This document shows, piece after piece, positions 195 through 42,389 of a stretch of DNA of 64,000 nt. Source of the stretch: Octopus sinensis (taxonomy: Eukaryota); assembly GCF_006345805.1 (NCBI RefSeq), contig NC_043002.1:96410001-96474000 (forward strand). The letters run 5' to 3'. Every line of letters begins with the position of its first letter. Within the stretch, counting starts at the first letter, position 1. The notes under the pieces are model-generated. The model saw only the letters and a program-made list of their open reading frames with translations, searched no databases and had not been told where the DNA came from. Position numbers and translations under genes: made by a program.

Positions 195-310
195 AATTGC
201 TGCTGAAGCTTCATAGCCATTGGTGATCCATGACTTGGTACCATTTAGCACCCAATGGTCACCATGCAGGTGTGCAACTGTTGATGCTGCAGCTGCATCA
301 CTCCCATTAC
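195..310 (-). CDS. ACADS: Short-chain specific acyl-CoA dehydrogenase, coding exon 5 (gene continues off the left edge)
   Basis: Translates (G)[38 protein letters not shown], matching the ACAD GSDA and NGTKxWITN motifs. Acceptor tcattcag| and donor |GTAAGT are present. Phase 1 start matches the end of exon 4. Confidence 0.95.
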
Positions 311-3950: not shown

Positions 3951-4072
3951 TGTTAGAAATTTCCACAATAACCATTCAATTACTGCATCTTGTTGTAAAT
4001 TTGGACTCAGCCCGCAATAAATCTGATTATTTTAATGAGATTTCACAGTAAACATTATCAACAATACATTAC

Positions 4073-4184
4073 CTGGTTCACTTAAGGCAAAACATCCTAT
4101 TTTATCTCCATCTATGTAAGATGAGATGTATTCTTTTTTCTGTGATGAATTTCCAAAGTCTTTAATTGGTGCTAAGTAAAGAGA
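4073..4184 (-). CDS. ACADS: ACADS coding exon 4 (112 nt; not in the ORF track)
   Basis: [37 protein letters not shown](G), compared with human [38 protein letters not shown] as recalled. Acceptor cttcag| and donor |GTAATG; phases 0/1. Confidence 0.95.
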
Positions 4185-4745
4185 CTGAAGGTTAGAATAA
4201 AATTAATCCGTTGAGAATTTTTTTTTTATCATAATATATCAATTTGGGGTATTGTTCTAAGAAACTATTTTTCTTTACTCATTAAAATAATTTGGCATTT
4301 CTAAATTTGAATGGATGAAATGAGATTACTGAGAACAACTGTATATTAATATCAATGTTTGAAATGAATTATTAGCAAGTAGTTTGGAACTTCTGAACTG
4401 ATCAACCAAATAACTTACATTTCTGTTTACACATTTTGATTAGTAAATATTCGTATCTATAGGTGCAACAGTTCAACATTTATTCAACTTCTTTACCTGA
4501 GCTGGAACTTGGTTATGACATTCGCTCTTTTTGCATTCAGTTATTATTTTACTAATTTCAGTCATGATGGGGAATCACTTTCGAGGATTTTAGTCGATTG
4601 ATCATATCAATCTCACTATATATTTCAATCTGGGTTCTCCTTTTAGTGATCTCTATATGGTAAATGGCTAAGTTATCTTTTAACATAAATGGAGGCAACT
4701 TGACACACTTTTACATAATCATATACAAACATTCATGCAAATATT

Positions 4746-5175
4746 GGATCTTTTTCGTTTGAACGACAGTTTTTAACATAATTTCTAGGTTATTTTAAAA
4801 TATTTTAAACTTCGTATACTGATAGAATGTGTTTATAAAACATCTTTTTCTCTTGGCTTTATTGAGAAAATTCTATAGTTTGTAAGATATTTGTTGGTTT
4901 TTTTCTTCAATTTCTGCAATTTCAACCAATCACTGACGTCTATTGAGGTAAAAAAACATTCTGTGCCGAATGAATATGTCCCTCGTTTAAGAAACAGATT
5001 GGGTTTATTTACACTTGTGAAGAAAAAAACTACCCTTCCCCCCACCCCTAACCCTAACTAACCCTAACCCTAAAACAGATTGGAATGCAATAGATCGATA
5101 CTAGGGTCATAATTATGAGTGACAATTTCATATGACACCGCTAGAAAAAAACTGCCGTTCAAACCGAAAAGATCC
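4746..5175. mobile_element. MITE with GGATCTTTT TIRs and internal (CCCTAA)-like repeats, copy 1
   Basis: ggatctttttcgtttgaacgacagttttt ... aaaaactgccgttcaaaccgaaaagatcc. Near-identical to 31556-31966. Confidence 0.85.
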
Positions 5176-5829
5176 GAAATATTTATATATGTGCATGTGT
5201 TTTTGTGTGTTTGTTTGTGTACATGTGTGGCCTAGTGTTGGGCCCATGGTAGTATGGTTTAGCAGCTTTGATAATGTGATCACTGCCATCTATTATTGAA
5301 ATAATCTGTAAAGGGGCCTTTTCTAGCCTAAAATGAATTATTCTGTCACACTCTTTGACGACCTATATTACTTATGTTATTCAATTCTCTGTTAGCAGTG
5401 TGACTATTTTACCAGGTCCAGTGTGGCACCACCTTGGAGAGTTTAGTAGAATAAATCGTTCCCCAGTTGCCATGATAGATCGTTAGCCACTACACACACT
5501 TGTTTTTTCTGTGTCCCTTTCTGTAGAAGAGCGTAGGCTTGAAATGTAAAAGACTTTTTCTATTCCTGAGCGTTATACTAATACATCTGTTTGTTTTGTA
5601 CACCACCTGTCTTCGTCTTTTTAGTTTTTTCGTAAACTCTCCCTTTAAAATTTAACTTCCAACTTTCCTCTAGTAGTTAGCATATGCCTATACTCCGCTA
5701 TTCTAGCATCGCTATAATTTCTCCCAGGGCTACCTTATATATTGTGTCAGTAATATAGCTCAAAACATGTCATCAAATATACAAATGATGAGATTGTTAT
5801 TAGTCAAGCTTAAACTATTCTGACATTTG

Positions 5830-6140
5830 AAGGTGTGTGGCTTAGGGGTTAGGGTATTCGGCTCATGATTGTAAGGTAGTGAGTTTGATTCCCGGCAGTG
5901 GATTGTTTCCTCGAACAAGACACTGTATTTCACATTGCTCCAGTCCACTCAGCTGCATTTCAAAGGAATAGCCTTGTCACATTCTGTGTCATGCTGAATC
6001 CCGCCTGAGAACTATGTTAAGGGTATGCATGTCTGTAGAGTGCTCAGTCACTTATATGTTACATGTTAATTTCTTGAGCAGGCTATTCTGTTGATCAGAT
6101 CAACTGGAACCCTAGTTGTCATAACTGACAGGGTGCCAAT
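5830..6140 (+). mobile_element. tRNA-headed SINE of a third family (duplicated at ~7296-7603)
   Basis: Head gtgtgtggcttaggggttaggg...gtttgattcccggc; central aagacactgtatttcac...gctccagtccactcagctg. An inverted tail homolog lies near 45340-45510. Confidence 0.6.
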
Positions 6141-6397
6141 TTTATTCTGACATTTACATAAAGGTACGTACATCCTCTTGATTTAACTTGGTTTTACAAA
6201 CTATTTTGTAATTTGTGACTTCATATGATGCAATCTAACTAAACAAACTAAGCACTGAAAAAAAAAAATATATTAATGATTTCAGTGGACAATAATGAAA
6301 TATTTATAATATTGCAGTAATCATATTTTTTGAGAATCTTTAACAAGGCAAAAAAAAAAAAAAAAAAAAAAAAAAAGGAAGAATTTTGAAAACTTAC

Positions 6398-6547
6398 ATT
6401 ATTGACACTCATAATAACTCCACATGTAGCACAACCACGACTAATCTCTTCCATTGCTATAGCATAAGCAAGAGAATCTAATCCAGTGCCACCATCTTCT
6501 GAAGGTATAGTAATAGCCAAAAGTCCAAGGTCCCCGAGTTTTTTTAT
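6398..6547 (-). CDS. ACADS: ACADS exon 3, downstream duplicate copy (150 nt)
   Basis: [50 protein letters not shown], identical by eye to 7863-8012, with intact attcag| and |GTAAGT sites. Whether it is used, or is real rather than an assembly artefact, cannot be seen from sequence. Confidence 0.7.
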
Positions 6548-6649
6548 CTGAATGTCAAAAGATAAATTATTATACATAAATGTGACTATGTTAGCATACA
6601 CACACACACAAATACATATATACATTTTATATATATATATAATATATAT

Positions 6650-6695
<46 letters not shown>

Positions 6696-6700
6696 ATAAC

Positions 6701-7111
6701 GGGAAGCTTTATGAAAATAGACAAAAGACGAAGGCAGGTTTACGGAAATAAACAAAAGACGAAGGCAGGTGGAATACAATCAAACAATTGTATTAGTATG
6801 GCGCTTAGGAAATATAAATAAAACAAGTCTTTAACGTTTCGAGCCTACGCTCTTCAACAGAAAGATACACAGAGAAAAAACACAGAAAGAAGGAGAGAAA
6901 AAAAATATGCGTGCAGAGGCTAGCGAATCGCCATAGATCGTTAGCCACTACACACATTTTTTTTCTCTCCTTGTTTTCTGTGTCCTTTCTGTAGAAGAGC
7001 GTAGGCTTGAAATGTAAAAGACTTTTTCTATTCCTGAGCGTTATACTAATACATCTGTTTGTTTTGTACACCACCTGTCTTCGTCTTTTTATTTTTTTCG
7101 TAAACTCTCCC
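6701..7111. mobile_element. Foldback (palindromic) non-autonomous element, copy 1, with Penelope-LTR-like hammerhead motifs
   Basis: GGG...CCC termini. The left arm (6701-~6930) is an imperfect reverse complement of the right arm (6933-7111), e.g. tttcgagcctacgctcttc versus gaagagcgtaggcttgaaa. Confidence 0.75.
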
Positions 7112-7862
7112 TTTAAAATTTAACTTCCAACTTTCCTCTAGTAGTTAGCATATGCCTATACTCCGCTATTCTAGCATCGCTATAATTTCTCCCAGGGCTA
7201 CCTTATATATTGTGTCAGTAATATAGCTCAAAACATGTCATCAAATATACAAATGATGAGATTGTTATTAGTCAAGCTTAAACTATTCTGACATTGAAGG
7301 TGTGTGGCTTAGGGGTTAGGGTATTCGGCTCATGATTGTAAGGTAGTGAGTTTGATTCCCGGCAGTGGATTGTTTCCTCGAACAAGACACTGTATTTCAC
7401 ATTGCTCAAGTCCACTCAGCTGTATTTCAAAGGAATAGCCTTGTCACATTCTGTGTCATGCTGAATCCCGCCTGAGAACTATGTTAAGGGTATGCATGTC
7501 TGTAGAGTGCTCAGTCACTTATATGTTACATGTTAATTTCTTGAGCAGGCTATTCTGTTGATCAGATCAACTGGAACCCTAGTTGTCATAACTGACAGGG
7601 TGCCAATTTTATTCTGACATTTACATAAAGGTACGTACATCCTCTTGATTTAACTTGGTTTTACAAACTATTTTGTAATTTGTGACTTCATATGATGCAA
7701 TCTAACTAAACAAACTAAGCACTGAAAAAAAAAATATATTAATGATTTCAGTGGACAATAATGAAATATTTATAATATTGCAGTAATCATATTTTTTGAG
7801 AATCTTTAACAAGGCAAAAAAAAAAAAAAAAAAAAAAAAAAAGAAGAATTTTGAAAACTTAC

Positions 7863-8012
7863 ATTATTGACACTCATAATAACTCCACATGTAGCACAAC
7901 CACGACTAATCTCTTCCATTGCTATAGCATAAGCAAGAGAATCTAATCCAGTGCCACCATCTTCTGAAGGTATAGTAATAGCCAAAAGTCCAAGGTCCCC
8001 GAGTTTTTTTAT
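7863..8012 (-). CDS. ACADS: ACADS exon 3, upstream copy (150 nt)
   Basis: Same peptide, with the [10 protein letters not shown] signature of SCAD-type ACADs. Phase 0/0 and canonical splice sites. Confidence 0.92.
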
Positions 8013-8086
8013 CTGAATGTCAAAAGATAAATTATTATACATAAATGTGACTATGTTAGCATACACACACACACAAATACATATAT

Positions 8087-8127
<41 letters not shown>

Positions 8128-8128
8128 C

Positions 8129-8543
8129 GGGAAGCTTTATGAAAATAGACAAAAGACGAAGGCAGGTTTACGGAAATAAACAAAAGACGAAGGCAGGTGG
8201 AATACAATCAAACAATTGTATTAGTATGGCGCTTAGGAAATATAAATAAAACAAGTCTTTAACGTTTCGAGCCTACGCTCTTCAACAGAAAGATACACAG
8301 AGAAAAAACACAGAAAGAAGGAGAGAAAAAAAATATGCGTGCAGAGGCTAGCGAATCGCCATAGATCGTTAGCCACTACACACATTTTTTTTCTCTCCTT
8401 GTTTTCTGTGTCCCTTTCTGTAGAAGAGCGTAGGCTCGAAACGTAAAAGACTTTTTCTATTCCTGAGCGTTATACTAATACATCTGTTTGTTTTGTACAC
8501 CACCTGTCTGCGTCTTTTGTTGTTTTTTTTCGTAAACTCTCCC
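8129..8543. mobile_element. Foldback element, copy 2, embedded in (TA)n
   Basis: Same architecture as copy 1, with arms 8129-~8357 and 8361-8543. A lone right-arm copy also lies at 5475-5643. Confidence 0.75.
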
Positions 8544-8911
8544 TATATATATATATAATCCATATAAGAAGAGAAAGAGATGTTAACACATTTTTAATGA
8601 TCAGCTGCAATTGTTTCTGTAGTAATTCTGCTTTCAGCACCAGTTCATGCGCAAAAGCTCCAAGTGAAAATTTACATATCATCAAAGATCATTAAAGACA
8701 TGTCAAAGCGTTTCTCTGTCTTTTCGTTTGGATTATATTTCACTCTATGTTAAGCCCACACAATTGTTTTACCATTGTAAAACCTGAATTTTCTATGCCT
8801 GAAAAATTTTGATATTAGTCTGAAATCTGACAGTGTACGTAGCATAAAACTTGGGTTGAGTGCTGCATTGGAAATACCCTATCTTTCTACCCTCCCAGGA
8901 CCTTATATACA

Positions 8912-9165
8912 TCATCATCATCATCATCATCATCGTTTAACGTCCGCTTTCCATGCTAGCATGGGTTGGACGGTTCAACTGGGGTCTGGGAAGCCAGAAG
9001 GCTGCACCAGGCCCAGTCTGATCTGGCAGTGTTTCTACAGCTGGATGCCCTTCCTAACGCCAACCACTCCGTGAGTGTAGTGTGTGCTTTTTACGTGCCA
9101 CCGGCACAGGTGCCAGACGAGGCTGGCAAGCGGCCACGATCGGATGGTGCTTTTTACGTGCCACC
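8912..9165 (-). mobile_element. RTE-type LINE 3' end with (ATG)n tail
   Basis: (CAT)n cgtttaacgtccgctttccatgctagcatgggttggacgg...ggatgcccttcctaacgccaacc. Highly similar copies at ~10065-10335, 12160-12325, 20605-20945 and 54840-54985 (same orientation), and ~24770-24935, 29130-29320 and 61805-61945 (opposite). Extended copies join RTE-like coding (LGLTEAMT..D..LW). Confidence 0.75.
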
Positions 9166-9169
9166 AATT

Positions 9170-9250
<81 letters not shown>

Positions 9251-9439
9251 GATATATATCATCATTGTTTTCGGGTCCAATGCTCTTTCTGGGATCACCC
9301 TCACTTGTTTCCAAGCAAAGTTATATTTACCTGTCTTTTGCAGCTGAATAGCACAATGGCTGGACATGTTTTCATAAGGAATGGAAAATGAACAACATCA
9401 CTTGTATGTTGGTGATGTCTGTTTACAATTAGACAAGCA

Positions 9440-9614
9440 CAGGTGTGGCTGTTTGGTAAAAAGCTTGCTTCCTGACCACATGCTTCTGGGTTCAATCCCA
9501 CTGTGTGGCACTTTGGGTGTCTTCTACTGTAGCCTTGGGCTGACCAAAGCCTTATGAGAGGATTTGGTAGATGGAAACTGGAAGAAGCATGTCATATATT
9601 TATACATATGTATG

Positions 9615-9675
<61 letters not shown>

Positions 9676-9850
9676 GTGTGTGCCTTTGTGTCTGCGTTTG
9701 TCCCACACCACTGCTTGACAACCAGTGTCGGTATGTTTGTATCTTCATAACTTAGCAGTTTGTCAAAAGAGACCAATAGAATAACTACCAGGCTTAACAA
9801 AAAGATAAGTACTGGGGTCGATTCATTCAACTAAAAAGTTCTTCAAGTTA
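9440..9850 (+). mobile_element. Bipartite tRNA-derived SINE with central (TA)/(CA) microsatellite
   Basis: Head gtgtggctgtttggtaaaaagcttgcttcc...gggttcaatcccactg, then (TA)n, then tail ...aagtactggggtcgattc...gtgccccagca. Minus-strand copies at ~14400-14730, 15490-15895, 34090-34560, 39290-39680, 42940-43360 and 62620-62770. Confidence 0.75.
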
Positions 9851-12800
9851 GTGCCCCAGCACAGTAAAAGATAAACAAGTAAAAGAATAAATACAAAAGA
9901 TACGACAATATATTAGTGATCAACTGGTTGTAATACGATGGAGAGTTTGTTTTGTATAATACACAAAACAAACTGAATGGCCTTCTTTTGGCTGTAGTCT
10001 GTGATATTTGCACACGTAACAACAGCAGCACTATAATAATGTGAATCACACAAAAACTTAGTAATGATGATGATGATGATCATCATCATCGTTTAACGTC
10101 CGCTTTCCATGCTAGCATGGGTTGGACGGTTCAACTGGGGTCTGGGAAGCCAGAAGGCTGCACCAGGCCCAGTCTGATCTGGCAGTGTTTCTACGGCTGG
10201 ATGCCCTTCCTAACGCCAACCACTCTGTGAGTGTAGTGTGTGCTTTTTATGTGCCACCGGCACAGGTGCCAGATGAGGCTGGCAAACGGCCACGGGCAGA
10301 TGGTGCTTTTTACGTGCCACCGGCACGGAGGCCAAAGGCTGCAGTACTTTCTGATCCTGAAGATGAAGTTTAGTCCTGAATGCAAATTTAGTATGCGATG
10401 TTAGCATGACAGGACCTCATATATTTGTAGCAATACTGAACTTTTGAGTATTCATACATGGAGAGAGTGAAGTATGGGAAGGTTTCTTTATATGTGTACT
10501 ACTTGACATGCAACTTTTCTGCTGTTGAAGAAGTCTGGGGTACCATGTCCACAGTGAAGGATAATTGTGGAGTGCAGAGAGCAAGATGAGACAAGAAAGA
10601 CATATTGGTTATCTACTGCATTTGTCTCCATCCCCGGTTGCCTTGACCTAGTCTGGCCATTGGATTAAAGAGTAAGATCAATGGTGCGCAACTATTTTTC
10701 ACTTTAAATAAAGTCACCTCACAAGTCATCAATCATATTCTTAAGGCTGACTAAATGGTCCTCATTGCTCCAATGAATGAATACATGGAGGATATTTACA
10801 GGTCTCTATTCAGTGTATATCTAGCATAAGATGGATTATCAAGAGTGGCATCTTTTGTATAGAAGTTTGATAAGTTAGAAGTGACATTAACTCCGACATT
10901 GAGGTAGAAAGAAAAGACAAAGAGAGACATACCCATACATAAATACAGCAAAGATTAGAGAGAGAGACTGGTTAGTGCATGTTGTAATCTAATGAATCTA
11001 ACAGTTACAACAGTTTTAGTGCCCCCACCCCATCTAAATTTTGGTCAACAAAATGACCAAAATAATTACACACACACTCACACACAGAGGTATATATATC
11101 ATCATCATTATCATCAGTTAACGTCCGTCTTCCATGTTGGTATAGGTTGGACAATTTGACAGTAGCTGGTAAGCCAGAGGACTGTGCTAAGCTCCACTGT
11201 CTGTTTTGGCATAGGTTTTATGGCTGGATGGCCTAACACCAACCACTTTACAGTGCCTGTATGCATATATGTATTTAGATTTTTTATCGTTAAATAAAGA
11301 TTCATCTAAATATTTCTGTCATTTATTACTATATGTATATATACCTACATATATATAAACAAAGGATGCGTGTGTGTGTGTAGTATGTATGCATTTCTAC
11401 AGTTTTCAATTGATTTTCACCAAACTTTACACACACATTACTTCTGTGCCAAAGACGGTCATGTACTATAACACTTTGCCCAGAGCTCCCATGTAAAGTG
11501 AGAATCTGGGAAAAACAGTGTTTTACACGGGTTTTTCTCAAAAAACTTCTGCAGCTTTCGACCGATCCTCTCCCTTTTCTCTCTTTGTTTATTACTCTCT
11601 TCTCTCATTCTCTGTTTCTCTTGCTTAAACATATTCTTATCTACCCTCTGTAATAGTTCCTCTCTTTTAGTCTATGTCTGTTTCTCTCCGTCTCTCTCTC
11701 TTTAACTCACATACTAACTTCTGCCTATAAATTGATTTCTGTGTATTTCAATTAGTTTGTACACAAAAGTCTCTGTTGTTACAGTTTTTGTAAGTTCTCC
11801 CTGAAAAATAATTTAATTATTTTTAACTTTTGTTCACCCAGTGTGTTTAAATTCTGTTTTGCCACATCTTCCTAAAAACTGAATTCAATGTATTTCAGTT
11901 TTGTCATGCATAAATATCTTTGTCTTTATGGTATTTCATGTTCTCCCTACAACATTACTTATTTAAAATTTTTTACACTCCGTTTATTTAAATATACTAT
12001 TTACATTTCTCCCTCTATCAAAAACCATTGTGCGTGCAGTTATGCATGAGTACATATGACTGCTATGGGCTTTTCACTCAAGCTATTTTCTTCTAGAGCT
12101 TTATACACTCAAACGGGGTTTGTAAGTTCTGTCAACAAACTGACTTCCTTGTCTCATCATCATCCTCATCATCATCGTTTAACGTCCGTTCTCCATGCTA
12201 GCATGGGTTGGACGGTTCGACCGGGGATCTGGGAAGCCAGAAGGCTGCACCAGGCTCCAGTCTTATCTGTCAATGTTTCTACAGCTGGATGCCCTTCCTA
12301 ACGCCAACCACTCCGTGAGTGTAGTAAAATTCTTTGTCTGTCTGTCTGCTCCCTATGCATTCTTAAATGGCTTGACCAAATCAAATCAAATTTTACAAGG
12401 TAATAGTATCAGATCCCGTGAGTATCAACATGTATTTTTTTTACATTTGTAAAAAAAAAATATAACATTGGCATTGGTTCAGTATTACATGTCAAAAGTG
12501 AAAGAATAAGATCTATATTGTAATGTCATGATATATTGTTTCGCTTTTGTTCTTTCACTTATCATTCTAAGCCTATAATATTGTTACACCTTTATTCTTT
12601 CATTTTTAATTCTTCTGTGATAAATAAATGAATAATTTATATCCTTATGTGAACAATATTACACATTGGCAACTTTCCGTCTTGGCATCGTGACAGCAGA
12701 ATGGTGTGTCAGTGTATGTGTGTTGACTGACATAACGAACAGCTGCAGGTGAAACTCTCGACAAAAAACAATTAGGTGGCAGGTCCAAGGTATATAAAAA

Positions 12801-16696: not shown

Positions 16697-16842
16697 CTGT
16701 TCTGCTGGGAACTTCTTTAATTTGTCAATTTCAGCAGCTACTGGCATCAACTCTTTCTCAGCAAATTCATGACATGTTTCTTGCAGCATTTTGTGTGTGT
16801 CTGGAAGATCCACTAAGGATGAGAAAGCTCTTGCAGGTACTC
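16697..16842 (-). CDS. ACADS: ACADS coding exon 2 (146 nt)
   Basis: (R)VPARAFSSLVDLPDTHKMLQETCHEFAEKELMPVAAEIDKLKKFPAEQ matches the ACAD N-terminal helix (human [34 protein letters not shown]). Acceptor tatttcag| and donor |GTTTCT; phases 1/0. Confidence 0.95.
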
Positions 16843-17300: not shown

Positions 17301-17705
17301 TCTATATATATAAAAGAGAGATTCTGTCCATTTGTATGTTTGTTTGTCCCATAAAGCGAAAGTAAATGGTTCAAGGGAGGCAACACTAATTATGCACAAA
17401 TTTATGATGAACTGCATTGAGGCAAATATTCTCACTGATTGTGGTAAACATCCCAGAAAGTGAAAGTAAATGGTTCAAAGGAGGCAACACTAATTGTGCA
17501 CAAACCTATGATGAACTACATTGTGACAAATATTCTCACTGGTTGTGGTAAAGGTGAGACTGTCTTCATTCCTCACATACCAGTTACACCATCTAATGTC
17601 CCATTCCAATTTAAGCCCTTACAGTTTCCTATCCCACTTTCTTTTGCTATAAGCATTAATAAAAGGCAGGACCAAACACTAAAAGTTGCTGGATTGCAAC
17701 TAGGC
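17301..17705 (+). mobile_element. Helitron remnant: 5' TC end plus PIF1-type helicase fragment
   Basis: a|TCTATATATATAAAA 5' end. NILTGCGKGETVFIPHIPVTPSNVPFQFKPLQFPIPLSFAISINKRQDQTLKVAGL matches the RepHel helicase C-terminal motifs (FIPRI, LQFP, FAMSINKSQGQT). Confidence 0.85.
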
Positions 17706-20700
17706 CACACATGTACATAAACACCTTGATTTGAAACTGAATCTCTCAATTCTCCTTGACATACAGCCTATTCAAATGTCAAAACAAACCATGACAAATG
17801 AGTCTTCCACTTCACCTGTGGCCTTCTCAGTGCCATTGCACAGTCACCTGGATTCCCTAAAGTTATTCTTCTAGCTTCATTCACAATACACCACCAATTC
17901 AAACGTCAAAAGGAACAGCAACAAATGGATGTTCCATTTAATTAGTAGCCTTTTCAGGGCTATCACAGTCATCTGGATTCTGTAAAGCTATTCTTCTATA
18001 TGATATATCCTTTTTTTCTAGCTTCTTGGTTTTAATTATGAGCATTAATAAAAGTCAGGACCAAACACTCAATGTTGCTGGATTGCAACTTCAAGAACAA
18101 ACAGAAGTTCATATAACAAATCCATCATTTTTCTACTTCAATTATTACATGTTTTTCTCTTATATAATACACACATGGAAGACAAGTAAACCTAAATCTG
18201 ACTGACAGGACACAGCATTTGTAAATTCATTGGACTATTACTTACTGTTGCCTTGCCTTCCATTCCTGTAATATAGCATTGGAATTTCAACACTAACACT
18301 GACAGGTGACAGCATTTGTAATTTCATATCACTATTACTTACTGATATTCCTAAAAGAGAGCTTTTTTTTTATGGCACCAACGTTACAGAGGCATTATAT
18401 CCTCGACAAAACTTTACAGCATATTGGATGCATTGTTATTTATAGTAGCACCAGAGAGATAGATATGTCCTTGACTCAGAGGTATGGCAAGCTCTTTTGA
18501 ATCCATTGTAATTTCAGTATCATCAGCAGGTATCTCAGGTTCATAAGCATTCCATCCCTTAGCCTGTACACTTCTCCAGACTGTGGCAGCAAGGACTAAA
18601 TTATCTTCACATGTGGTCTCTTGTCAATCACAACCACCTTGATCTGGTTTCAGCTGCCATGTGCCAATCTCCTTGGTGGCTTTCTTCACTTGATTGGGTT
18701 CCAGATCAATCTTCTGAAGGAAACAGTGCACTGTTCTTGCTGAAAAGCTGAGGTAGTTGACTTCAACAGGGTATGTGGCTACATGCCATCCCCTAACAAG
18801 GGTCTCATCAAGTCTTGGTTTTTGTTAGCTGGTAAGAAATATTTGAAAGAGCAGAGAATTCTCATGTCACATATAGTTTGAATTGCAAGTGATTAAATAA
18901 TCAGAAATAATATTTAATCATCAGTATAATCTTGCCTCAAGTGACACCTCTGAATATATCAGTACAATCATCTCTTCTGTATATAATTAATGAAGCTTTT
19001 AATACCAGTTGTCCTTATGCTTTGCTTTCATTAAATTTAACATCATACAGCCAATCAATCATGTTCACATCATTAAAGCCACGTCTCTTTGTTCCATCAG
19101 ATCTCTCTTCATTTCTTTCACACCATCCTATCCTTTTATTAGCACTAATTAAATTACCTAGGTAACAGAAATTGTTGACAACATCCAGCAAGCCATCAGA
19201 GTAGTTCATTTCAGGTGTGTTTCTACTGCTAATTATTTCAGTACGTGTATCACATTTAAATATCTAATTAATCCAGTACACATATCACATATAAATAACT
19301 TTCTTTTTAATCTTTAGATAGCAATTCATAAATGGATCTCCTTTCTTTTTTCCATTTAATTTTACCTTTTTCCTGCTCTTTGAACCCAGCATTACACATC
19401 TGACCTGAATATTTACACATATTTCTGACTACGCATCACATTGTCTATGGACCCTGGGATACTAAGAGTAAGAAACCATTCTGTTCTATACACTACAGAC
19501 TTATAACCTAATTTCTATGGCCATTTGATATACAAAATCTGATCAAAAAGTATCAGTAATAGTGCTATGAAAAGAAAACTACCACACATCAATTCAGCAT
19601 TTAATCTCTTTCAATGTAGTCCCCTTCTGAAGCCACACCCACTTTATCCAGCATTGTTTCCATTGATGGAAACATTTCTGGAGCTCTTTTGGGGGGATAG
19701 CAAGCAGCTACCTCATCACAATCTCTAGGATTTGCACAATGTCTTGAAATCTTGTTCCTTTAAAAGGGGTTTGATTTTGCCATGACCGTTTTCGAAATGT
19801 TTTTGCCTTCCTTGACACAATCAAGGAGATCCTGCACAGCTGAAACCCTCTCTTCTTTTTGAGACGACTACACTCTACACCCTTTACTTCCAAGCACTGC
19901 TATAAACAATGGAAGTGAGTGAGAGAATTATAACTTAGTGCACATGCACGACAGAGTTCAAGGTCAATCTGTGCCAAGTGGATTCACTCTGCACACTTTA
20001 GCTCTGTTACCGTAGCAACAGTCCTGATACTTTTTGAACAGACCTCATATCTATGATTTTTTACTATATTTTCTCTGTAGACTACAAGCTAAATAACATC
20101 AGAGTTGATTTCAAATCAGAATGTTTGATTAACCTTGACTAGACTTCACCATTTCAATCCAGAGTTTTGTATTCATTTTAAGAGGAATTCTTAAATTAGT
20201 TCATCTATTTAAAGAGTATTCCTTTTCCTGATTCATCTCAATGCATATATCAATGAGTGCAAGAACTGAAATTAAATCTAAGAGTGAAGCTCAGGATGAA
20301 TATTTGCCACTAAAGGTCTTCTTACTTTCTTTTTACAAAGATGTTATTGATGCATTCCTGAATGTTCTCTTTTATTGTCAAATTCCAAATAGTCTTCAGT
20401 AAAGGAAAGTCAAATATTGTTGGAATGATTGTTCAGACTTAGATTAGTATGCCTCTGTTATGCAAATAACGTTGATATAAAGAGCATGCACATTTGACTG
20501 GAAGGGGAAGCAAGAGAATGTCCATTCGGAATAACATGCAGGACTATGACTAAAAATTAGTTTCTTTGAACCAGGATTTACTAGTTATACGTTACAACTT
20601 CTTTTATCATCATCATCATCATCATCATCATCTAACGTCCGCTTTCCATGCTAGCATGGGTTGGACGGTTCAACTGGGGTCTGGGAAGCCAGAAGGCTGC

Positions 20701-23215
20701 ACCAGGCCCAGTTTGATCTGGCAGTGTTTCTATGACTGGATGCCCTTCCTAACGCCAACCACTCCATGAGTGTAGTGGGTGCTTTTTACGTGCCACCGGC
20801 ACAAGTGCCAGACGAGGCTGGCAAACGGCCACAATCGGATGGTGCTTTTTACGTGCCACCGGCATGGAGGCCAGGCGAGGCTGGCAACGGCCACGATCGG
20901 ATGGCCGTTGCCAGCCTCACCTGGCCTCCGTGCCGGTAGCACGGTTAATCTCCAATAAGTATCAGGTACCATATTTGCTCTATACATAAACAGTTCCAAC
21001 AATGAATTGAAACTGAATTGTTGATGCAGTAGTAACAGAACACAGACCTACAGACTAGCCTATGAGGGACTATCTCTATAGACACTCAACCTGCAAGAAA
21101 GAACAGCCAGAATTTTTCAAAACATATAATACCTTTAAAAAAATGAGATACTGAATAATAAAGCCTACTTTATTTTTATATGATGCAGTCAAAGTAACAT
21201 CCATGATCTATTTTCAAGATCTCTGAGAGTGATGGGAGGAAATTATCCTCAGTCAGGAGATCTGATTCCAATGGATGCAACAGTGCAAAAGCAAACTGCA
21301 ATTGTGAACAAAAAAAAAAAAGAAATGGTAATTGGTCATTGATGGGTAGATCACCACTGACCTAGAGAAAACAATGACAGTGATGCCTCATGGGACACTC
21401 CACATCAAATAGCTCTGATTAAACTGAAGTAGCAGTGTGTAACTTTGCAGTGTGTAATTTTGAACAATAAATTTTGGGCAAAATGTAGAACATGTCATCC
21501 TTCACAACTCTGCCTAACTTTCGATTCATTACAATAATATTTGATAAACAAGGCAGCAAGTTGACAGAATCATTAGCATGCTGGGCAAAATGCTTCATGG
21601 TATTTCATCTGTCTTTATGTTCTGAGTTAAAATTTCACTGCAGTCAACTTTGCCTTTCATCTTTCCAGGGTCAATAAAATAAGTACCAGTTGATCACTGG
21701 GGTTGATGTAATTGACTTACACCCTTCCCCAAAACTGTTGGCCTTGTGCCAAAATCTAAAATCAATATTTGATAAACAACAACAGTCTTTTCAAATTAAA
21801 TGTCTAAATGTACATGAGTATACATAAAAATATTAGTATTTTAGCATATCACCCTTTTGAGTTAAACTTACAGGGTATCAAGTTTTAACCAAGCAGCCAG
21901 AGGAGGGAATAGGATAGTGTGATGTCAAATAATGACTACAAAACTAAGCTGGGAATTTAAATACCAGTGCTAAAAAATAAAAATGTCTCTCTTTTGCCTC
22001 TACATGGTCATTAGACCGAGAAATAGCAGCTAAGTCTCTTAATTCACACACTGCTGTCTTAAAAACCACGCCCTCTCAACACCTGGTACAAAACCACCTC
22101 CCTGCCTAAATATTCCCCAACCCCATTTAGTCCAGCAGGCTTTTCAAGTTCTTGTCCTGTTCTGCAAGTTACCAGTGTTCAATGGCATAAAAATGCATCC
22201 ATTACATACCATAATGTGGTTGGTATTAGGAAGGGCATCCAATTGTAGAAATCACGCCAAATCTGACAATGCCTCTACATAGTCATTAGACCTAGTAATA
22301 GCAGCTAAATCTCTCTTAAATCACACACACTGCTGTCTTCAAAACAGAAGAAGGACAATATACTATTTTCACTGATCACCTCTTCTCTGTGCTTTCAGTT
22401 ATCTGTTCCTCTCTTCTGCCATACTTTACCTTAACAGCTCTCATATCTGCTATCATTCACAATGTCCTCTATAATCCACCATCATGCTTCACTCCTTACA
22501 GCCACCCTTATGTGCCTGTGCATCTCCCTCCTAACTGCTCCAACATCTTGCACATCAATCCTCTGCTTCCAAATGTATCCTCTCTTACCTACCCTCTCTC
22601 CATACTGGTATTTTCAATCAACAACACCTCCACCCTTGTTTATCACTCATTACATTCACCTCTACCCCCATCTCTAAACATGTTCTTTCTTCACACTATT
22701 TTGAAACTATCCCTCCTACCACTGATTCACTTTCAGTATCCTCTCTTATGCTGGGCTTTTTGCTCCTTAAAGGTTTGCTCAGGCACCCCATCATTACCAT
22801 CTTTACCTTCTTCTCAGCCATTCCCACCCTTATATAATGCAAGGTGCCTATGTATCTTTTCTATAGTAAGACATCTGTGTTTGTGTCTTGGCTTCTCAAC
22901 CCCTCGTATAAAACCAACTCCCCACTTAAATACTTCCCCAATCCCACTTAGTCACACAGGCTTTTTCCTCTTTTGCAAGTTACTTGTTGACTTCACTACT
23001 GCCCAGTGGCATTAAAAAGCACCCACAGTACACACTGTAATGTGGTTGGCATTAGGAAGGTCATCCAGCTGTAGAAACCATACCAAAAATGACAATGGAA
23101 CTTGAAGCAGCCCTGCAGCTTACTGGTGCCTATCAAATCTTCCAGCCCATGCTAGCATGAAAAATAGATATTAAATGATGATGATGCATATAGTCCCTAA
23201 TATATAAACACACAC

Positions 23216-23764: not shown

Positions 23765-24935
23765 AAATCAAAATAGATGAACATCAATGGAATTTGTATC
23801 TTTGTGGTACCAGTACCTGTGGCACACAAGAAAACCATCCGAACGTGGCCGTAGCCAGTACCGCATCGACTGGCCTCTGTGATGTGGGCACATAACAAAC
23901 ACCATCCGATCGTGGCCGTCCGCCAGCCTCATCTGGCACCTGTGTCGGTGGCACATAAAAACACCAACCGAAGACCCGGCAAGACTAGTCAGGCCATAAC
24001 CCGTGGCCCCTACTTGGGACGTAGTCAGTCCACCTGTGCATACCTTCCTTCCTTCTTGTGACACTTGTGAAGACCTGTGAAGACCTGTTGAGGCAAGTGA
24101 AAATCAAATCAAATCAAATCAAAATAGATGAACATCAATGGAATTTGTATCTTTGTGGTACCAGTACCGGTGGCACACAAGAAAACCATCCGAACGTGGC
24201 CGTAGCCAGTACCGCATCGACTGGCCTCCGTGCTGTGGGCACGTAACAAACACCATCCGATCGTGGCCGTTCGCCAGCCTCATCTGGCACCTGTGTCGGT
24301 GGCACATAAAAACACCAACCGAAGACCGGCAAGACTAGTCAGGCCATAACCCGTGGCCCCTACCTGGGACGTAGTCAGTCCACCTGTGCATACCTTCCTT
24401 CTTGTGACACTTGTGAAGACCTGGTGAGGCAAGTGAAAATCAAATCAAAACAAATCAAAATAGATGAACATCAATGGAATTTGTATCTTTGTGGTACCAG
24501 TGCCGGTGGCACACAAGAAAATCATCCGAACGTGGCCGTAGCCAGTACCGCATCGACTGGCCTCTGTGATGTGGGCACGTAACAAACACCATCCGATCGT
24601 GGCCGTTCGCCAGCCTCATCTGGCACCTGTGTCGGTGGCACATAAAAACACCATCCGAGCGTGGCCGTCTGCCAGCCTCGTCTGGCACCTGTGTCGGTGG
24701 CACATAAAAACACCATCCGAGCGTGGCCATTCGCCAGCCTCGTCTGGCACCTGTGTTGGTGGCACATAAAATCACCCACTACACTCTCGGAGTGGTTGGC
24801 GTTAGGAAGGGCATCCAGCTGTAGAAACACTGCCAGATCTGACTGGCCTGGTGCAGCCTTCGGGCTCCCCAGACCCCAGTTGAACCGTCCAACCCATGCT
24901 AGCATGGAAAACAGACGCTAAATGATGATGATGAT
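23765..24935 (+). repeat. Tandem array of RTE-LINE 3' sequence (~340-350-bp units x3, plus ~62-bp subunits)
   Basis: The anchor atagatgaacatcaatggaatttg recurs at 23773, 24124 and 24460. The ~62-bp unit accatccgatcgtggccg...ggcacataaaaac is repeated 3-4 times at 24590-24770. The array ends in an (ATG)n tail. Confidence 0.9.
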
Positions 24936-25126
24936 GATATACATACATTCATATATATACATATATATATACATATATATATACATACATTCATATATAT
25001 ACATATATATATATACATACAGTCATATATATACATATATATACATACATTCATATATATACATATATATACATACATTCATATATATACATATATATAC
25101 ATACATTCATATATATATACATACAT

Positions 25127-25173
<47 letters not shown>

Positions 25174-25834
25174 CACACATACACAAAAATATGCATATAC
25201 ATAAATATAACAACTTTGACTACTGTTTTACACAAGCATAAATTTGTCAGAAGAATTTGACCTTGATAAGCTGTTATCATCCTAGATTTTGACCCGACAT
25301 TCAAGTATCAAAGTCCAGATAACAGCTACTGACATTATATAGTCCACGTGCTTGTGCATGTGGATGGTAAAGTAACAGAGTATATTCTAAGTTATGCCCC
25401 ACATTTAGTTTTACAATTGAAACTTATCAAGCTTATCGCTGAGCAAGTTAATTTTTTACGCTAGTAGGTGTATGACAGCTGCTATAAATCCTTTATGCAC
25501 CAAACTCAGCATGGATACTAAAAGATCTAGCCCACTAAAGTATAAGTTATGTTTAAGATTTAAATAATTTCACCCACTTTGTATGCTAAACAATATTTTT
25601 ATGTTGCTGTATATAAGCTTTGGGTTTCTTGACGGAATGGCAGTAACTTAAAAGGCTTTAGTATTCAGATTGCTTTGTCAAATGTAATAGTTATTCATAC
25701 ACATTTTATAAAATCAATCCTGTATTATCTCATAACATTGAGATTTCGAAGATATGATTATTTATTTTTAGAATGACATTGCAGGGTAGGTGTGAGAAGC
25801 TGGATCTGGTTAGTTCACTGATTGCGGATCCTGG

Positions 25835-26150
25835 GTGGATGTTGTTTACCTGGACTTTGCTAAGGCTTTTAATTCTGTGCCACACAAAAGACTTATGGTG
25901 AAACTCTCTGCAATGGGTGTAAGAGATGATCTCTATAACTGGTTGAAGTCCTTCATTATCAGCCGAAAAGAGGTTGTCACAGTTCTAGGACAGCACTCTT
26001 CACCCTATGAGATGACATCTGGTGTACCACAGGGATCTGTTCTTGACCCCCTTTTATTTGTTGCACATGTTAATGACATAGATGCCAACTTAAAGAATGC
26101 CACAGTGCTGAAATATGCAGATGACATCAAGCTGTACCTCGAAATAAAGA
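25835..26150 (+). mobile_element. Non-LTR reverse transcriptase fragment (CR1/L2/Jockey-like)
   Basis: DVVYLDFAKAFNSVPH...TSGVPQGSVLDPLLF...LKYADDIKLY contains the RT motifs DxxKAF, GVPQGS and YADD. No endonuclease or LINE ends are present. Confidence 0.9.
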
Positions 26151-26625
26151 GGACAGATCCTGTACACTATAGATCTTTATTGCAATCAGTTCAAAAAGAA
26201 ACTGAAATACCAAAATTACACACTGTTCCTTTGTGGATGACTTACGACGAGATGAAAAAGAGCCTTGTCCTAGTTACAACATTCCCAAAGGATATAGGGT
26301 TGGAGTTATTATTACCTTATTAATACTATTAATAACGGTAATAATACTTCTTTATTTAAATTTTTCTTGTTCACAAGAGTTTCTTTTAAACAGAGTGGGA
26401 CATTTAAAGTAAAGAATACACACGAGATAATGTAGTGAATATTTTAGAAATAGATGTTAAAATGTTATTTTCAACTGAAGATCATAGAGTATATTCGTCA
26501 TGCAAAGCGTGAAATCAACTGATAAATACTGCATCAATTACAGAATTTATTTTTTGATCCATGTAGAAAAATACAGCAATTACAAATCTGGGAATATATT
26601 TGTTTTAATGTTTAATTTTTCTTAA

Positions 26626-26909
26626 AGAAACACTCAATGGTTCTTCCACCCATCTCACCCACCCACTACCTACCTGCTTTCAAAAAAGTTTAAAGTAACC
26701 TATGTTTCACTTTTGTCCGATGTTCCTTGCATGCATAGAATTGTACTGAAATAGCAGTCATAAAAAATATTAGAGCATCATCAAAAAACCTGACATGCTA
26801 GAAACAACAGGTAAATCACAATATTTCTGAAGAAACTTCCCCACTTTCTAAAAAGCTAAAAGTGGTGAGGTGATGGGTGGATGTTTGGGAAGGAGATTTT
26901 AGTGTTTCT
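26626..26909. mobile_element. TTAA-flanked MITE with AG...CT termini (Kolobok-like)
   Basis: TTAA|AGAAACACTCAA ... TTAGTGTTTCT|TTAA. A related copy lies at ~32045-32375. The superfamily is inferred from the TTAA target and RR termini only. Confidence 0.6.
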
Positions 26910-33847: not shown

Positions 33848-33893
33848 TGGAATATGCCTTCTGGACATATCTTAGAAGACAGGTAGTTGCCAT
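33848..33893 (-). CDS. ACADS: ACADS coding exon 1 (start codon; putative mitochondrial transit peptide)
   Basis: cacaATG GCA ACT... gives MATTCLLRYVQKAYS plus one base, then |GTAAGC. The 46 coding nt end in phase 1, join exon 2 in frame, and equal the human exon 1 coding length as recalled. The peptide is basic, hydroxylated and acid-free. No other candidate was seen between 16.9 and 34 kb. Confidence 0.8.
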
Positions 33894-38611: not shown

Positions 38612-38823
38612 AGCTCTCCCTATATATATTATATAATGCGTGTGTCTGTCCCCACACCTCCGCTTGACATTCGGTGTCGGTTTGATTACGTCCACGTAAC
38701 CTAGTGGTTCAGAAATACGATGGTCTAGAATTGGCATCAGATAGCATACTAAATTGTAAATGGCCACGTTTACTGTATGCTAAACTGGCACTAGAGATTT
38801 AATGAAACAGTTTACCTATCAGA
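38612..38823. repeat. Inverted repeat, left arm (partner at 42174-42389)
   Basis: About 212 bp and nearly an exact reverse complement of 42174-42389, with only a handful of substitutions. Confidence 0.95.
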
Positions 38824-42173: not shown

Positions 42174-42389
42174 TCTGATAGGTAAACTGTTTCATTAAAT
42201 CTCTAGTGCCAGTTTAGCATACAGTAAACGTGGCCATTTACAATTTAGTATGCTATCTGATGCCAATTCTAGACCATCTTATTTCTGAACCACTAGGTTA
42301 CGTGGACGTAATCAAACCGACACCGAATGTCAAGCGGAGGTGCGGGGACAGACACGCGCATTATATAATATATATATATAGGGAGAGCT
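42174..42389. repeat. Inverted repeat, right arm (partner at 38612-38823)
   Basis: tctgataggtaaactgtttcattaaatctctagtgcc...tatagggagagct. Confidence 0.95.

What the first reader, a model, noticed from the sequence alone, without database searches (positions are those of the whole stretch)
5475..8543. ACADS exon 3 is tandemly duplicated, and the junction is a chimera of two repeat copies
Seen: the order is R' (5475-5643), unique+exon 3, L-R (6701-7111), unique+exon 3, L-R (8129-8543). The middle right arm matches the 8361 copy at its 5' end (ttttttttctctccttg, absent at 5475). It matches the 5475 copy at its 3' end (gcttgaaatg instead of gctcgaaacg; then ccctttaaaattt). Inference: this is the footprint of unequal crossover between the two right arms, at about 6960-7005. 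Both exon copies are 150 nt, phase 0/0, identical, with intact splice sites. Including both would add a 50-aa in-frame repeat to the ACAD N-terminal domain; otherwise one must be skipped. It could be a very young, possibly polymorphic exon duplication in a core beta-oxidation enzyme. A repeat-induced misjoin of two haplotypes would look similar.
Basis: partly seen in the sequence, partly recalled or inferred. Interest (0 to 1): 0.72.

Follow-up and report, generated by a model that had tools for sequence, protein, structure and literature searches.

The report
Young tandem duplication of ACADS exon 3
In the Octopus sinensis reference assembly, a 1.4-1.5 kb piece of the short-chain acyl-CoA dehydrogenase gene that carries exon 3 is present twice in tandem, joined exactly as recombination between two flanking repeats would join it; three other octopods have one copy, and only sequencing reads can show whether this one is real or an assembly error.

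Summary
The window is Octopus sinensis GCA_006345805.1, chromosome CM016864.1. The gene, on the minus strand, is the ACADS orthologue. A 1.43-1.47 kb unit holding exon 3 (150 nt, phase 0/0) occurs twice in tandem. The exon copies and their splice sites are identical. The non-repeat parts differ by 2 substitutions plus homopolymer and TA-microsatellite length changes.

The junction repeat R* is a clean chimera. It matches R at its 5' end and R' at its 3' end, with the switch inside 6977-7007.

New evidence: O. vulgaris, O. bimaculoides and Argonauta hians each have one exon 3. O. vulgaris has the single-unit arrangement R'-U-R, which is the expected substrate. R* carries changes specific to the sinensis R', so the event postdates the split from O. 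vulgaris (put at 2.5 My in PMC10700109). All four annotated octopod ACADS proteins are 409 aa, which means one exon 3. No assembly gap lies within 28 kb.

Best reading (about 0.6): a real, very young and probably polymorphic duplication made by non-allelic homologous recombination. Rival (about 0.33): an assembly artefact. Reads were not available.

The mechanism is textbook and the interest is low to moderate.

The parts
5434..5643 (+). R' element. It appears to be an internally deleted copy of the foldback repeat: a left end GGAGAGTTTAG joined to the right half. It is the proximal recombination partner.
   Evidence: It is present at the orthologous site in O. vulgaris (L001 35279-35099) and absent in O. 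bimaculoides.
5516..6983 (+). Duplication unit, copy 1 (1468 bp): the 3' part of R', U, the TA microsatellite, L, and the 5' part of R*.
6984..8411 (+). Duplication unit, copy 2 (1428 bp). It is shorter mainly because its TA microsatellite is 36 bp shorter.
6398..6547 (-). ACADS exon 3, the downstream copy in transcript order. 150 nt, phase 0/0, encodes IKKLG...MSVNN (residues 65-114).
7863..8012 (-). ACADS exon 3, the upstream copy in transcript order. It is identical to the other copy, splice sites included.
6701..6932 (+). L arm, first copy. It is an inverted, roughly 75-80% identical relative of R.
   Evidence: Together with R* it folds as a 410-nt hairpin. It is absent from O. vulgaris.
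6933..7112 (+). R*, the chimeric junction repeat. It is R-like up to about 6976 and R'-like from 7008. It has two private changes next to base runs: CCC to CC at 6984, and G to T at 7092.
6977..7007 (+). The interval within which the switch from R-type to R'-type sequence must lie.
   Evidence: the last R-specific marker and the first R'-specific marker.
8129..8360 (+). L arm, second copy. It lies within a stretch (6685-6984 vs 8113-8412) that is 100% identical between the two units.
   Evidence: (family D2).
8361..8543 (+). R, the distal recombination partner. It is 99.4% identical to O. vulgaris R (L001 34059-33879).
16697..16842 (-). ACADS exon 2. It ends ...FPAEQ|gt, phase 0.
4073..4184 (-). 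ACADS exon 4 (SLYLAPI...SEPG).
195..310 (-). ACADS exon 5. The rest of the gene runs off the start of the window.
33848..33893 (-). Coding part of ACADS exon 1. The ATG is at 33893 (MATTCLLRYVQKAYS).

Best explanation
A real, very recent tandem duplication of a 1.43-1.47 kb segment of the Octopus sinensis ACADS gene, produced by non-allelic homologous recombination (unequal crossover) between two same-orientation copies of a short foldback or MITE-like repeat, R' and R, that flank exon 3.

The inferred ancestral state is R'-U(exon 3)-(TA)n-L-R. O. vulgaris still shows R'-U-(TA)n-R. A crossover within about 30 bp of identity, at 6977-7007, gave R'-U-L-R*-U-L-R.

The event happened in the sinensis lineage after the split from O. 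vulgaris. The copies differ by only about 0.2% in substitutions. The allele is therefore most likely still polymorphic, and possibly heterozygous in the sequenced animal.

Shown:
- the anatomy of the duplication
- the chimeric junction
- single copies in three other octopods
- the timing after the split

Inferred:
- that the structure exists in the animal's DNA
- that with two identical exons, identical splice sites and a 1315-nt intron between them, default splicing would include both. That would give a 459-aa protein with residues 65-114 repeated. The repeat would begin inside helix 62-70 and end inside helix 104-124 of the N-terminal domain, and would probably destabilise the enzyme.
For: -: the window is 100% identical to O. 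sinensis CM016864.1. tblastn finds two exon-3 copies in O. sinensis and one each in O. vulgaris, O. bimaculoides and Argonauta hians.
- O. vulgaris has R' and R flanking a single U, which is the substrate the model needs.
- R* has R markers at its 5' end and R' markers at its 3' end, with no added or lost bases at the switch. Its 3' part carries the sinensis-specific TpG states of R' (GGCTTGAAATG). O. vulgaris R' reads GGCTCGAAACA and R reads GGCTCGAAACG. The junction therefore formed after the species split.
- the two copies differ by 2 real substitutions in about 1015 aligned bases, against 2.4-3.1% between either copy and O. vulgaris. Each copy has its own derived state (5956 C in copy 1; 7408 A in copy 2).
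- there is no N in the window or in the 67 kb locus L002, so the duplication is at least 28 kb from any assembly gap. Ko et al. (PMC9516828) found that false duplications are most often separated by a gap.
- O. vulgaris carries its own 785-bp tandem duplication, 99.4% identical, in intron 1 of the same gene. O. sinensis has one unit there. Young local tandem duplications therefore look common in these introns.
Against: - No reads, read depth or second O. sinensis assembly could be examined.
- The annotated O. sinensis protein XP_029637893.1 is 409 aa, which means one exon 3. No 459-aa octopus isoform appeared among the top hits or in the cluster. A homozygous duplication spliced by default should have produced such an isoform.
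- Most differences between the copies are homopolymer or microsatellite lengths, which is also the typical error profile of a long-read consensus.
- An in-frame 50-aa repeat in a core beta-oxidation enzyme is likely to be deleterious. That lowers the prior for a fixed allele, but not for a heterozygous one.
Confidence: 0.6

Rival explanations
1. Assembly artefact. The O. sinensis genome has one unit, R'-U-L-R. On this view the assembler or consensus step passed through U twice, switching from R to R' inside their shared sequence. The two copies would be either the two haplotypes (a heterotype false duplication) or the same haplotype with consensus errors (a homotype one).
For: - The duplication is seen only in this one assembly. 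Three other octopods have one copy.
- All annotated proteins are 409 aa.
- Most differences between the copies are homopolymer or TA-repeat lengths, which fits long-read consensus error.
- One derived substitution in each copy is also what two alleles would show.
- False exon gains are documented in older assemblies (PMC9516828).
- The table in PMC10700109 lists this assembly as more fragmented and less completely placed on chromosome-scale scaffolds than the others it compares.
Against: - There is no gap between or near the copies. False duplications are usually gap-associated.
- The unit is much shorter than I would expect long reads to be, so single reads should span it. This rests on my recollection that the assembly is PacBio-based.
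- A repeat of about 170 bp at about 95% identity is a poor basis for a false long-read overlap (my knowledge of overlap assemblers).
- The junction is exactly homologous and in register.
- Substitution divergence is about 0.2%, roughly six times below the 1.22% heterozygosity reported for O. vulgaris. That argues against two average haplotypes. Two clean substitutions argue against a pure same-haplotype copy.
Confidence: 0.33
2. An older duplication shared with O. vulgaris, collapsed or secondarily lost there and kept near-identical in O. sinensis by gene conversion. It would then be possibly fixed and in use, for example as alternative exons.
For: The two copies are nearly identical, and L is missing in O. 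vulgaris. Some deletion or rearrangement has therefore happened at this site in one of the two lineages.
Against: - R* carries the sinensis-specific derived states of R'.
- O. vulgaris, O. bimaculoides and Argonauta all have one exon 3.
- Identical exon copies give no isoform diversity.
- The annotated proteins use one copy.
Confidence: 0.04

Closest known systems
Repeat-mediated (Alu-Alu type) NAHR exon duplications in human genes, such as the BRCA1 exon 13 6-kb duplication, KMT2A partial tandem duplication, and LDLR and DMD exon duplications (from my own knowledge of the literature)
   Same: Two same-orientation interspersed repeats sit in the introns flanking an exon. Unequal crossover between them duplicates the segment in tandem. 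The junction carries a hybrid repeat, with the distal copy at the 5' end and the proximal copy at the 3' end.
   Different: The repeats here are halves of a roughly 410-bp foldback or MITE-like element, not Alu. The duplication is in frame. It is seen only in a reference assembly and has no read-level confirmation.
False duplications in genome assemblies (Ko et al. 2022, PMC9516828)
   Same: An exon appears twice in one assembly and once in related assemblies. The copies are nearly identical.
   Different: There is no assembly gap between or near the copies. The unit is far shorter than typical haplotig duplications. The junction is a precise homologous chimera. Read depth and k-mer tests could not be run.
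Tandem exon duplication as the origin of mutually exclusive exons (Kondrashov and Koonin 2001; Letunic, Copley and Bork 2002; from my own knowledge)
   Same: Two adjacent homologous exons of equal length and phase 0/0.
   Different: The copies are identical, so there are no alternative protein products. The pair is not conserved in any other octopod, and no transcript evidence exists. At best this is the very first step of that route.
ACADS, short-chain acyl-CoA dehydrogenase (human SCAD 7y0a/2vig, rat 1jqi)
   Same: The gene that hosts the duplication is the octopus orthologue: E = 2e-184 to human SCAD, with the Acyl-CoA_dh_N, M and 1 domains.
   Different: None for the annotated 409-aa product. 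A 459-aa product with residues 65-114 repeated is not known for any ACAD.

Membership tests
ACADS / acyl-CoA dehydrogenase family | N-terminal, middle and C-terminal ACAD domains above Pfam thresholds | tested here: met
   on P0357 (identical to the window's exons): PF02771 121 bits, PF02770 98.6 bits, PF00441 166 bits.
ACADS / acyl-CoA dehydrogenase family | The closest solved structures are short-chain (not medium-chain, isovaleryl or branched-chain) dehydrogenases | tested here: met
   human and rat SCAD (7y0a, 8sgs, 1jqi, 2vig) score E of about 1e-184, against 1e-83 to 1e-86 for IVD, SBCAD and MCAD.
NAHR-mediated tandem duplication | Direct repeats flank the single-copy unit in the unrearranged state | tested here: met
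   O. vulgaris has R' (L001 35279-35099) and R (34059-33879) around one U. They are about 94% identical to each other.
NAHR-mediated tandem duplication | The junction repeat is a hybrid, distal repeat 5' and proximal repeat 3', in register and with no inserted bases | tested here: met
   the switch lies between 6977 and 7007. The only private changes are CCC to CC and one G to T beside a T run.
NAHR-mediated tandem duplication | The structure is present in genomic DNA (spanning reads, raised depth, PCR) | not testable with these tools
   No reads were available. The metagenome scan for the exon found nothing.
False (assembly) duplication | An assembly gap between or next to the copies | tested here: not met
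   zero N in the window and in L002 (67 kb). The criterion comes from PMC9516828.
False (assembly) duplication | Haploid or lower read depth on each copy, and haplotype-specific k-mers | not testable with these tools
   No reads.
False (assembly) duplication | The copies differ at about the level of allelic heterozygosity | tested here: inconclusive
   2 substitutions in about 1015 bp (0.2%), against 1.22% genome-wide in O. vulgaris. Local heterozygosity varies, and O. sinensis' own value was not available.
Mutually exclusive exon pair | Diverged copies that give alternative protein segments, conserved across species | tested here: not met
   the copies are identical; other octopods have one copy.
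Mutually exclusive exon pair | Transcripts contain one copy or the other, never both | not testable with these tools
   The only available evidence is that the annotated proteins are 409 aa.

The most novel reading that the evidence does not exclude
The duplication is real and at appreciable frequency, or fixed, in O. sinensis, and it is transcribed. Animals would then either make a 459-aa ACADS with an internal 50-aa repeat, or skip one of two identical exons. That would be a caught-in-the-act first step of tandem exon duplication, driven by a foldback element, in a core beta-oxidation enzyme. The long L-R hairpins (z of about -22) just upstream of each exon copy might influence which copy is chosen.
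Probability: 0.12. Interest if true: 0.45.

Novelty: new member of a known kind. Interest (0 to 1): 0.25.

Why it matters
- If real, this is a clean and datable example (under about 0.2 My, after a 2.5 My species split) of how repeats in flanking introns duplicate an exon. It would also be a natural in-frame insertion allele of ACADS in a cephalopod model species.
- If it is an artefact, it is a caution for anyone using the O. sinensis reference for gene models or for O. vulgaris read mapping. Reads over exon 3 would map ambiguously, and exon counts for ACADS would be wrong.
- Either way the mechanism and the gene are well understood, so the general significance is modest.

Tried and rejected
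- protein searches with the doubled exon and with exons 2-5 returned no cephalopod. The tool appears to list only hits up to about 1.75 times the query length. A longer chimeric query (window exons 2-5 plus the C-terminal part of human ACADS recalled from memory, used only as a probe) then found the octopod proteins.
- a human ACADS sequence recalled from memory served only to locate the exons. Exon coordinates were later fixed by exact matches to XP_029637893.1.
- the O. sinensis genome paper (Li et al. 2020) is not in the library, so the assembler and polishing steps could not be checked.
- a metagenome scan for the exon sequence found nothing.
- Rfam gave only sub-threshold hairpin and low-complexity matches.
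- my first chaining script mis-seeded. The list of colinear blocks it printed was still usable.
- I asked whether R is an abundant family. No further copies turned up in about 190 kb of octopod sequence, so its genomic copy number is unknown.
- I asked whether the L-R hairpin is strand-biased, which would hint at selection on RNA. Both strands fold about equally well, so I dropped the idea.
- An ancestral duplication lost in O. vulgaris is rejected, because R* carries sinensis-specific derived states.
Full report
**Source and gene**

The reverse complement of window bases 1-43893 is 100% identical, over 43,893 bases, to locus L002. L002 is Octopus sinensis assembly GCA_006345805.1, chromosome CM016864.1.

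A protein probe and then exact peptide matching place a minus-strand gene in the window:
- exon 1: ATG at 33893
- exon 2: 16842-16697
- exon 3: two copies, 8012-7863 and 6547-6398
- exon 4: 4184-4073
- exon 5: 310-195

The gene then runs off the start of the window.

The spliced product equals the first 190 residues of XP_029637893.1 (P0357, 409 aa), provided one exon 3 is used. P0357 matches human short-chain acyl-CoA dehydrogenase (7y0a) at E = 2e-184. It has the three ACAD Pfam domains. The gene is therefore the octopus ACADS orthologue, and the duplicated exon is coding exon 3, residues 65-114.

**Check of the observation**

- Self-comparison gives 5505-7112 vs 6974-8544 at 96.8% over 1612 columns.
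- The core, 5505-6661 vs 6974-8127, is 99.3% identical over 1158 bp.
- No other direct repeat longer than 1 kb exists in the 64 kb window.
- The layout is R' (5475-5643), U, L-R* (6701-7112), U, L-R (8129-8543).
- The exon copies are identical, 150 nt, phase 0/0, with cag| acceptors and |gtaagt donors.
- Between the two U copies there are 2 substitutions (5941 C/A, 5956 C/T), several 1-bp changes in or beside base runs, and a 36-bp difference in a TA microsatellite.
- A 300-bp stretch that covers L (6685-6984 vs 8113-8412) is 100% identical between the two units.

**The junction**

I aligned the three O. sinensis R copies with the two O. vulgaris ones.

- R* equals R from its start through the TTTTTTTTCTCTCCTTGTTTTCTG block.
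- R* equals R' from 7008 onward: GGCTTGAAATG, T at 7081, no GTTG insert, then CCCTTTAAAATTT leading into U.
- The switch therefore lies in 6977-7007, a stretch where R and R' are identical.
- R* has two private changes, both next to base runs: CCC to CC, and G to T.

This is the polarity and precision expected from unequal crossover between R' and R.

**Comparative evidence (new)**

tblastn with the exon 3 peptide finds two copies in O. sinensis. It finds one copy in each of three other octopods:
- O. vulgaris (L001, GCA_951406725.2)
- O. bimaculoides (L003)
- Argonauta hians (L004)

O. vulgaris is colinear with the window from 4000 to 6679, and then directly from 8361 onward. Its arrangement is R'-U-(TA)n(GATA)n-R, with no L arm. 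O. bimaculoides lacks R'. What lies downstream of its U is hidden by an N run.

The R' and R repeats therefore predate the sinensis/vulgaris split, which PMC10700109 puts at 2.5 My. They form the substrate that the crossover model needs.

The 3' half of R* carries TpG states (GGCTTGAAATG) that are specific to the O. sinensis R'. O. vulgaris R' reads GGCTCGAAACA, and both R copies read GGCTCGAAACG. The junction therefore formed in the sinensis lineage after the split.

Substitution divergence is 2.4-3.1% between either U copy and O. vulgaris. Between the two copies it is about 0.2%, counting the two clean substitutions. A rough scaling gives an age under about 0.2 My, with a very wide error on two events.

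Polarising the differences with O. vulgaris and O. bimaculoides shows one derived substitution in each copy.

**What the repeats are**

- L-R folds into a 410-nt hairpin on either strand: -193 and -207 kcal/mol, z of about -22.
- Its ends are GGGAAGCTTTATG...CGTAAACTCTCCC, and it sits in TA-rich sequence.
- R' keeps a short left end (GGAGAGTTTAG) joined to the right half.
- I read these as a foldback or MITE-like element and an internally deleted copy of it. This is inference.
- No other copies occur in about 190 kb of octopod sequence.
- Rfam has nothing above threshold.

**Real or artefact?**

This could not be tested directly, because no reads and no second O. sinensis assembly were available.

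Points favouring a real duplication:
- It lies inside a contig, with no N in the window or in the 67 kb locus. It is therefore at least 28 kb from any gap. Ko et al. found that false duplications are most often separated by gaps (PMC9516828).
- The unit is much shorter than I would expect long reads to be, so single reads should span it. This rests on my recollection that the assembly is PacBio-based.
- The junction is a precise homologous chimera.
- Divergence between the copies is well below the 1.22% heterozygosity reported for the sister species. This argues against two average haplotypes.
- The two clean substitutions argue against one haplotype written out twice.
- The O. vulgaris assembly has its own 785-bp tandem duplication, 99.4% identical, in intron 1 of the same gene, which is single in O. 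sinensis. Young local tandem duplications therefore seem common in these introns.

Points favouring an artefact:
- The structure is seen in one assembly only.
- Most differences between the copies are of the kind that long-read consensus errors produce.
- All annotated octopod ACADS proteins are 409 aa. No 459-aa isoform appeared in the search or in the protein cluster.

My estimates are:

| Reading | Probability |
|---|---|
| Real, most likely polymorphic or heterozygous | about 0.60 |
| Assembly artefact | about 0.33 |
| Older or shared duplication | about 0.04 |

**Consequence if real (inferred)**

The two exons have identical splice signals and lie 1315 nt apart. Nothing in the sequence would enforce a choice between them. 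Default splicing would include both and keep the reading frame (one search shows two partial Acyl-CoA_dh_N matches in the double-exon translation).

In an AlphaFold model of the 409-aa protein (pLDDT about 88-92 over this region), residues 65-114 begin inside helix 62-70 and end inside helix 104-124. A tandem repeat of this segment would break the packing of the N-terminal helical domain. It would probably yield an unstable or inactive subunit. That fits a rare or heterozygous allele better than a fixed one.

**Comparison with what is known**

The mechanism is the same as repeat-mediated exon duplication in human genes, with a different kind of repeat. The pair does not qualify as mutually exclusive exons: the copies are identical, they are not conserved, and no transcript evidence exists. 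It fails the one false-duplication criterion that I could test, which is the gap criterion.

**Verdict**

- The structural interpretation is supported.
- Whether the duplication exists in the animal is unresolved, but a real duplication is the more likely reading.
- It is a new instance of a known kind of event, of low to moderate interest.

Noticed in passing
L001 25254-26872 (O. vulgaris ACADS intron 1); orthologous to window about 17650-18090: O. vulgaris has its own 785-bp-period tandem duplication (25254-26088 vs 26039-26872, 99.4% over 835 bp). It is present once in O. sinensis. This is the reciprocal of the exon-3 case and involves no exon.
   Followed up: partly
window 8889-11014: A 2.1 kb block immediately next to R is absent at the orthologous place in O. 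vulgaris. It holds two copies of a roughly 255-bp SINE-like repeat (8911-9165 and 10067-10321, 95% identical) plus TA and CA microsatellites. Further copies of the repeat lie at 20606-20860 and 24696-24938.
   Followed up: partly
window 6701-7111 and 8129-8543: L-R is a 410-nt near-perfect hairpin on both strands (about -193 and -207 kcal/mol, z of about -22), 117-154 nt upstream of each exon-3 acceptor. The L half is missing in O. vulgaris, where a (GATA)n run sits instead. It could be a substrate for dsRNA-dependent processes, which I did not test.
   Followed up: partly
window 5040-5075: A short interstitial run of telomere-like CCCTAA repeats in the intron.
   Followed up: no
window 23765-24658: A tandem array with a roughly 351-bp period (23765-24322 vs 24116-24658, 95%) in ACADS intron 1.
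   Followed up: no
window 5835-5960 and 7302-7427: A SINE-like element lies inside U. It shows about 78% similarity to a second site in the O. bimaculoides locus. Both substitutions that distinguish the two duplicated copies (5941, 5956) fall inside it, 15 bp apart. This would fit gene conversion or mis-polishing from other copies of the element as well as ordinary mutation.
   Followed up: no
window 38621-38823 and 42174-42376: A pair of inverted 203-bp repeats at 98.5% identity, 3.5 kb apart, upstream of ACADS.
   Followed up: no
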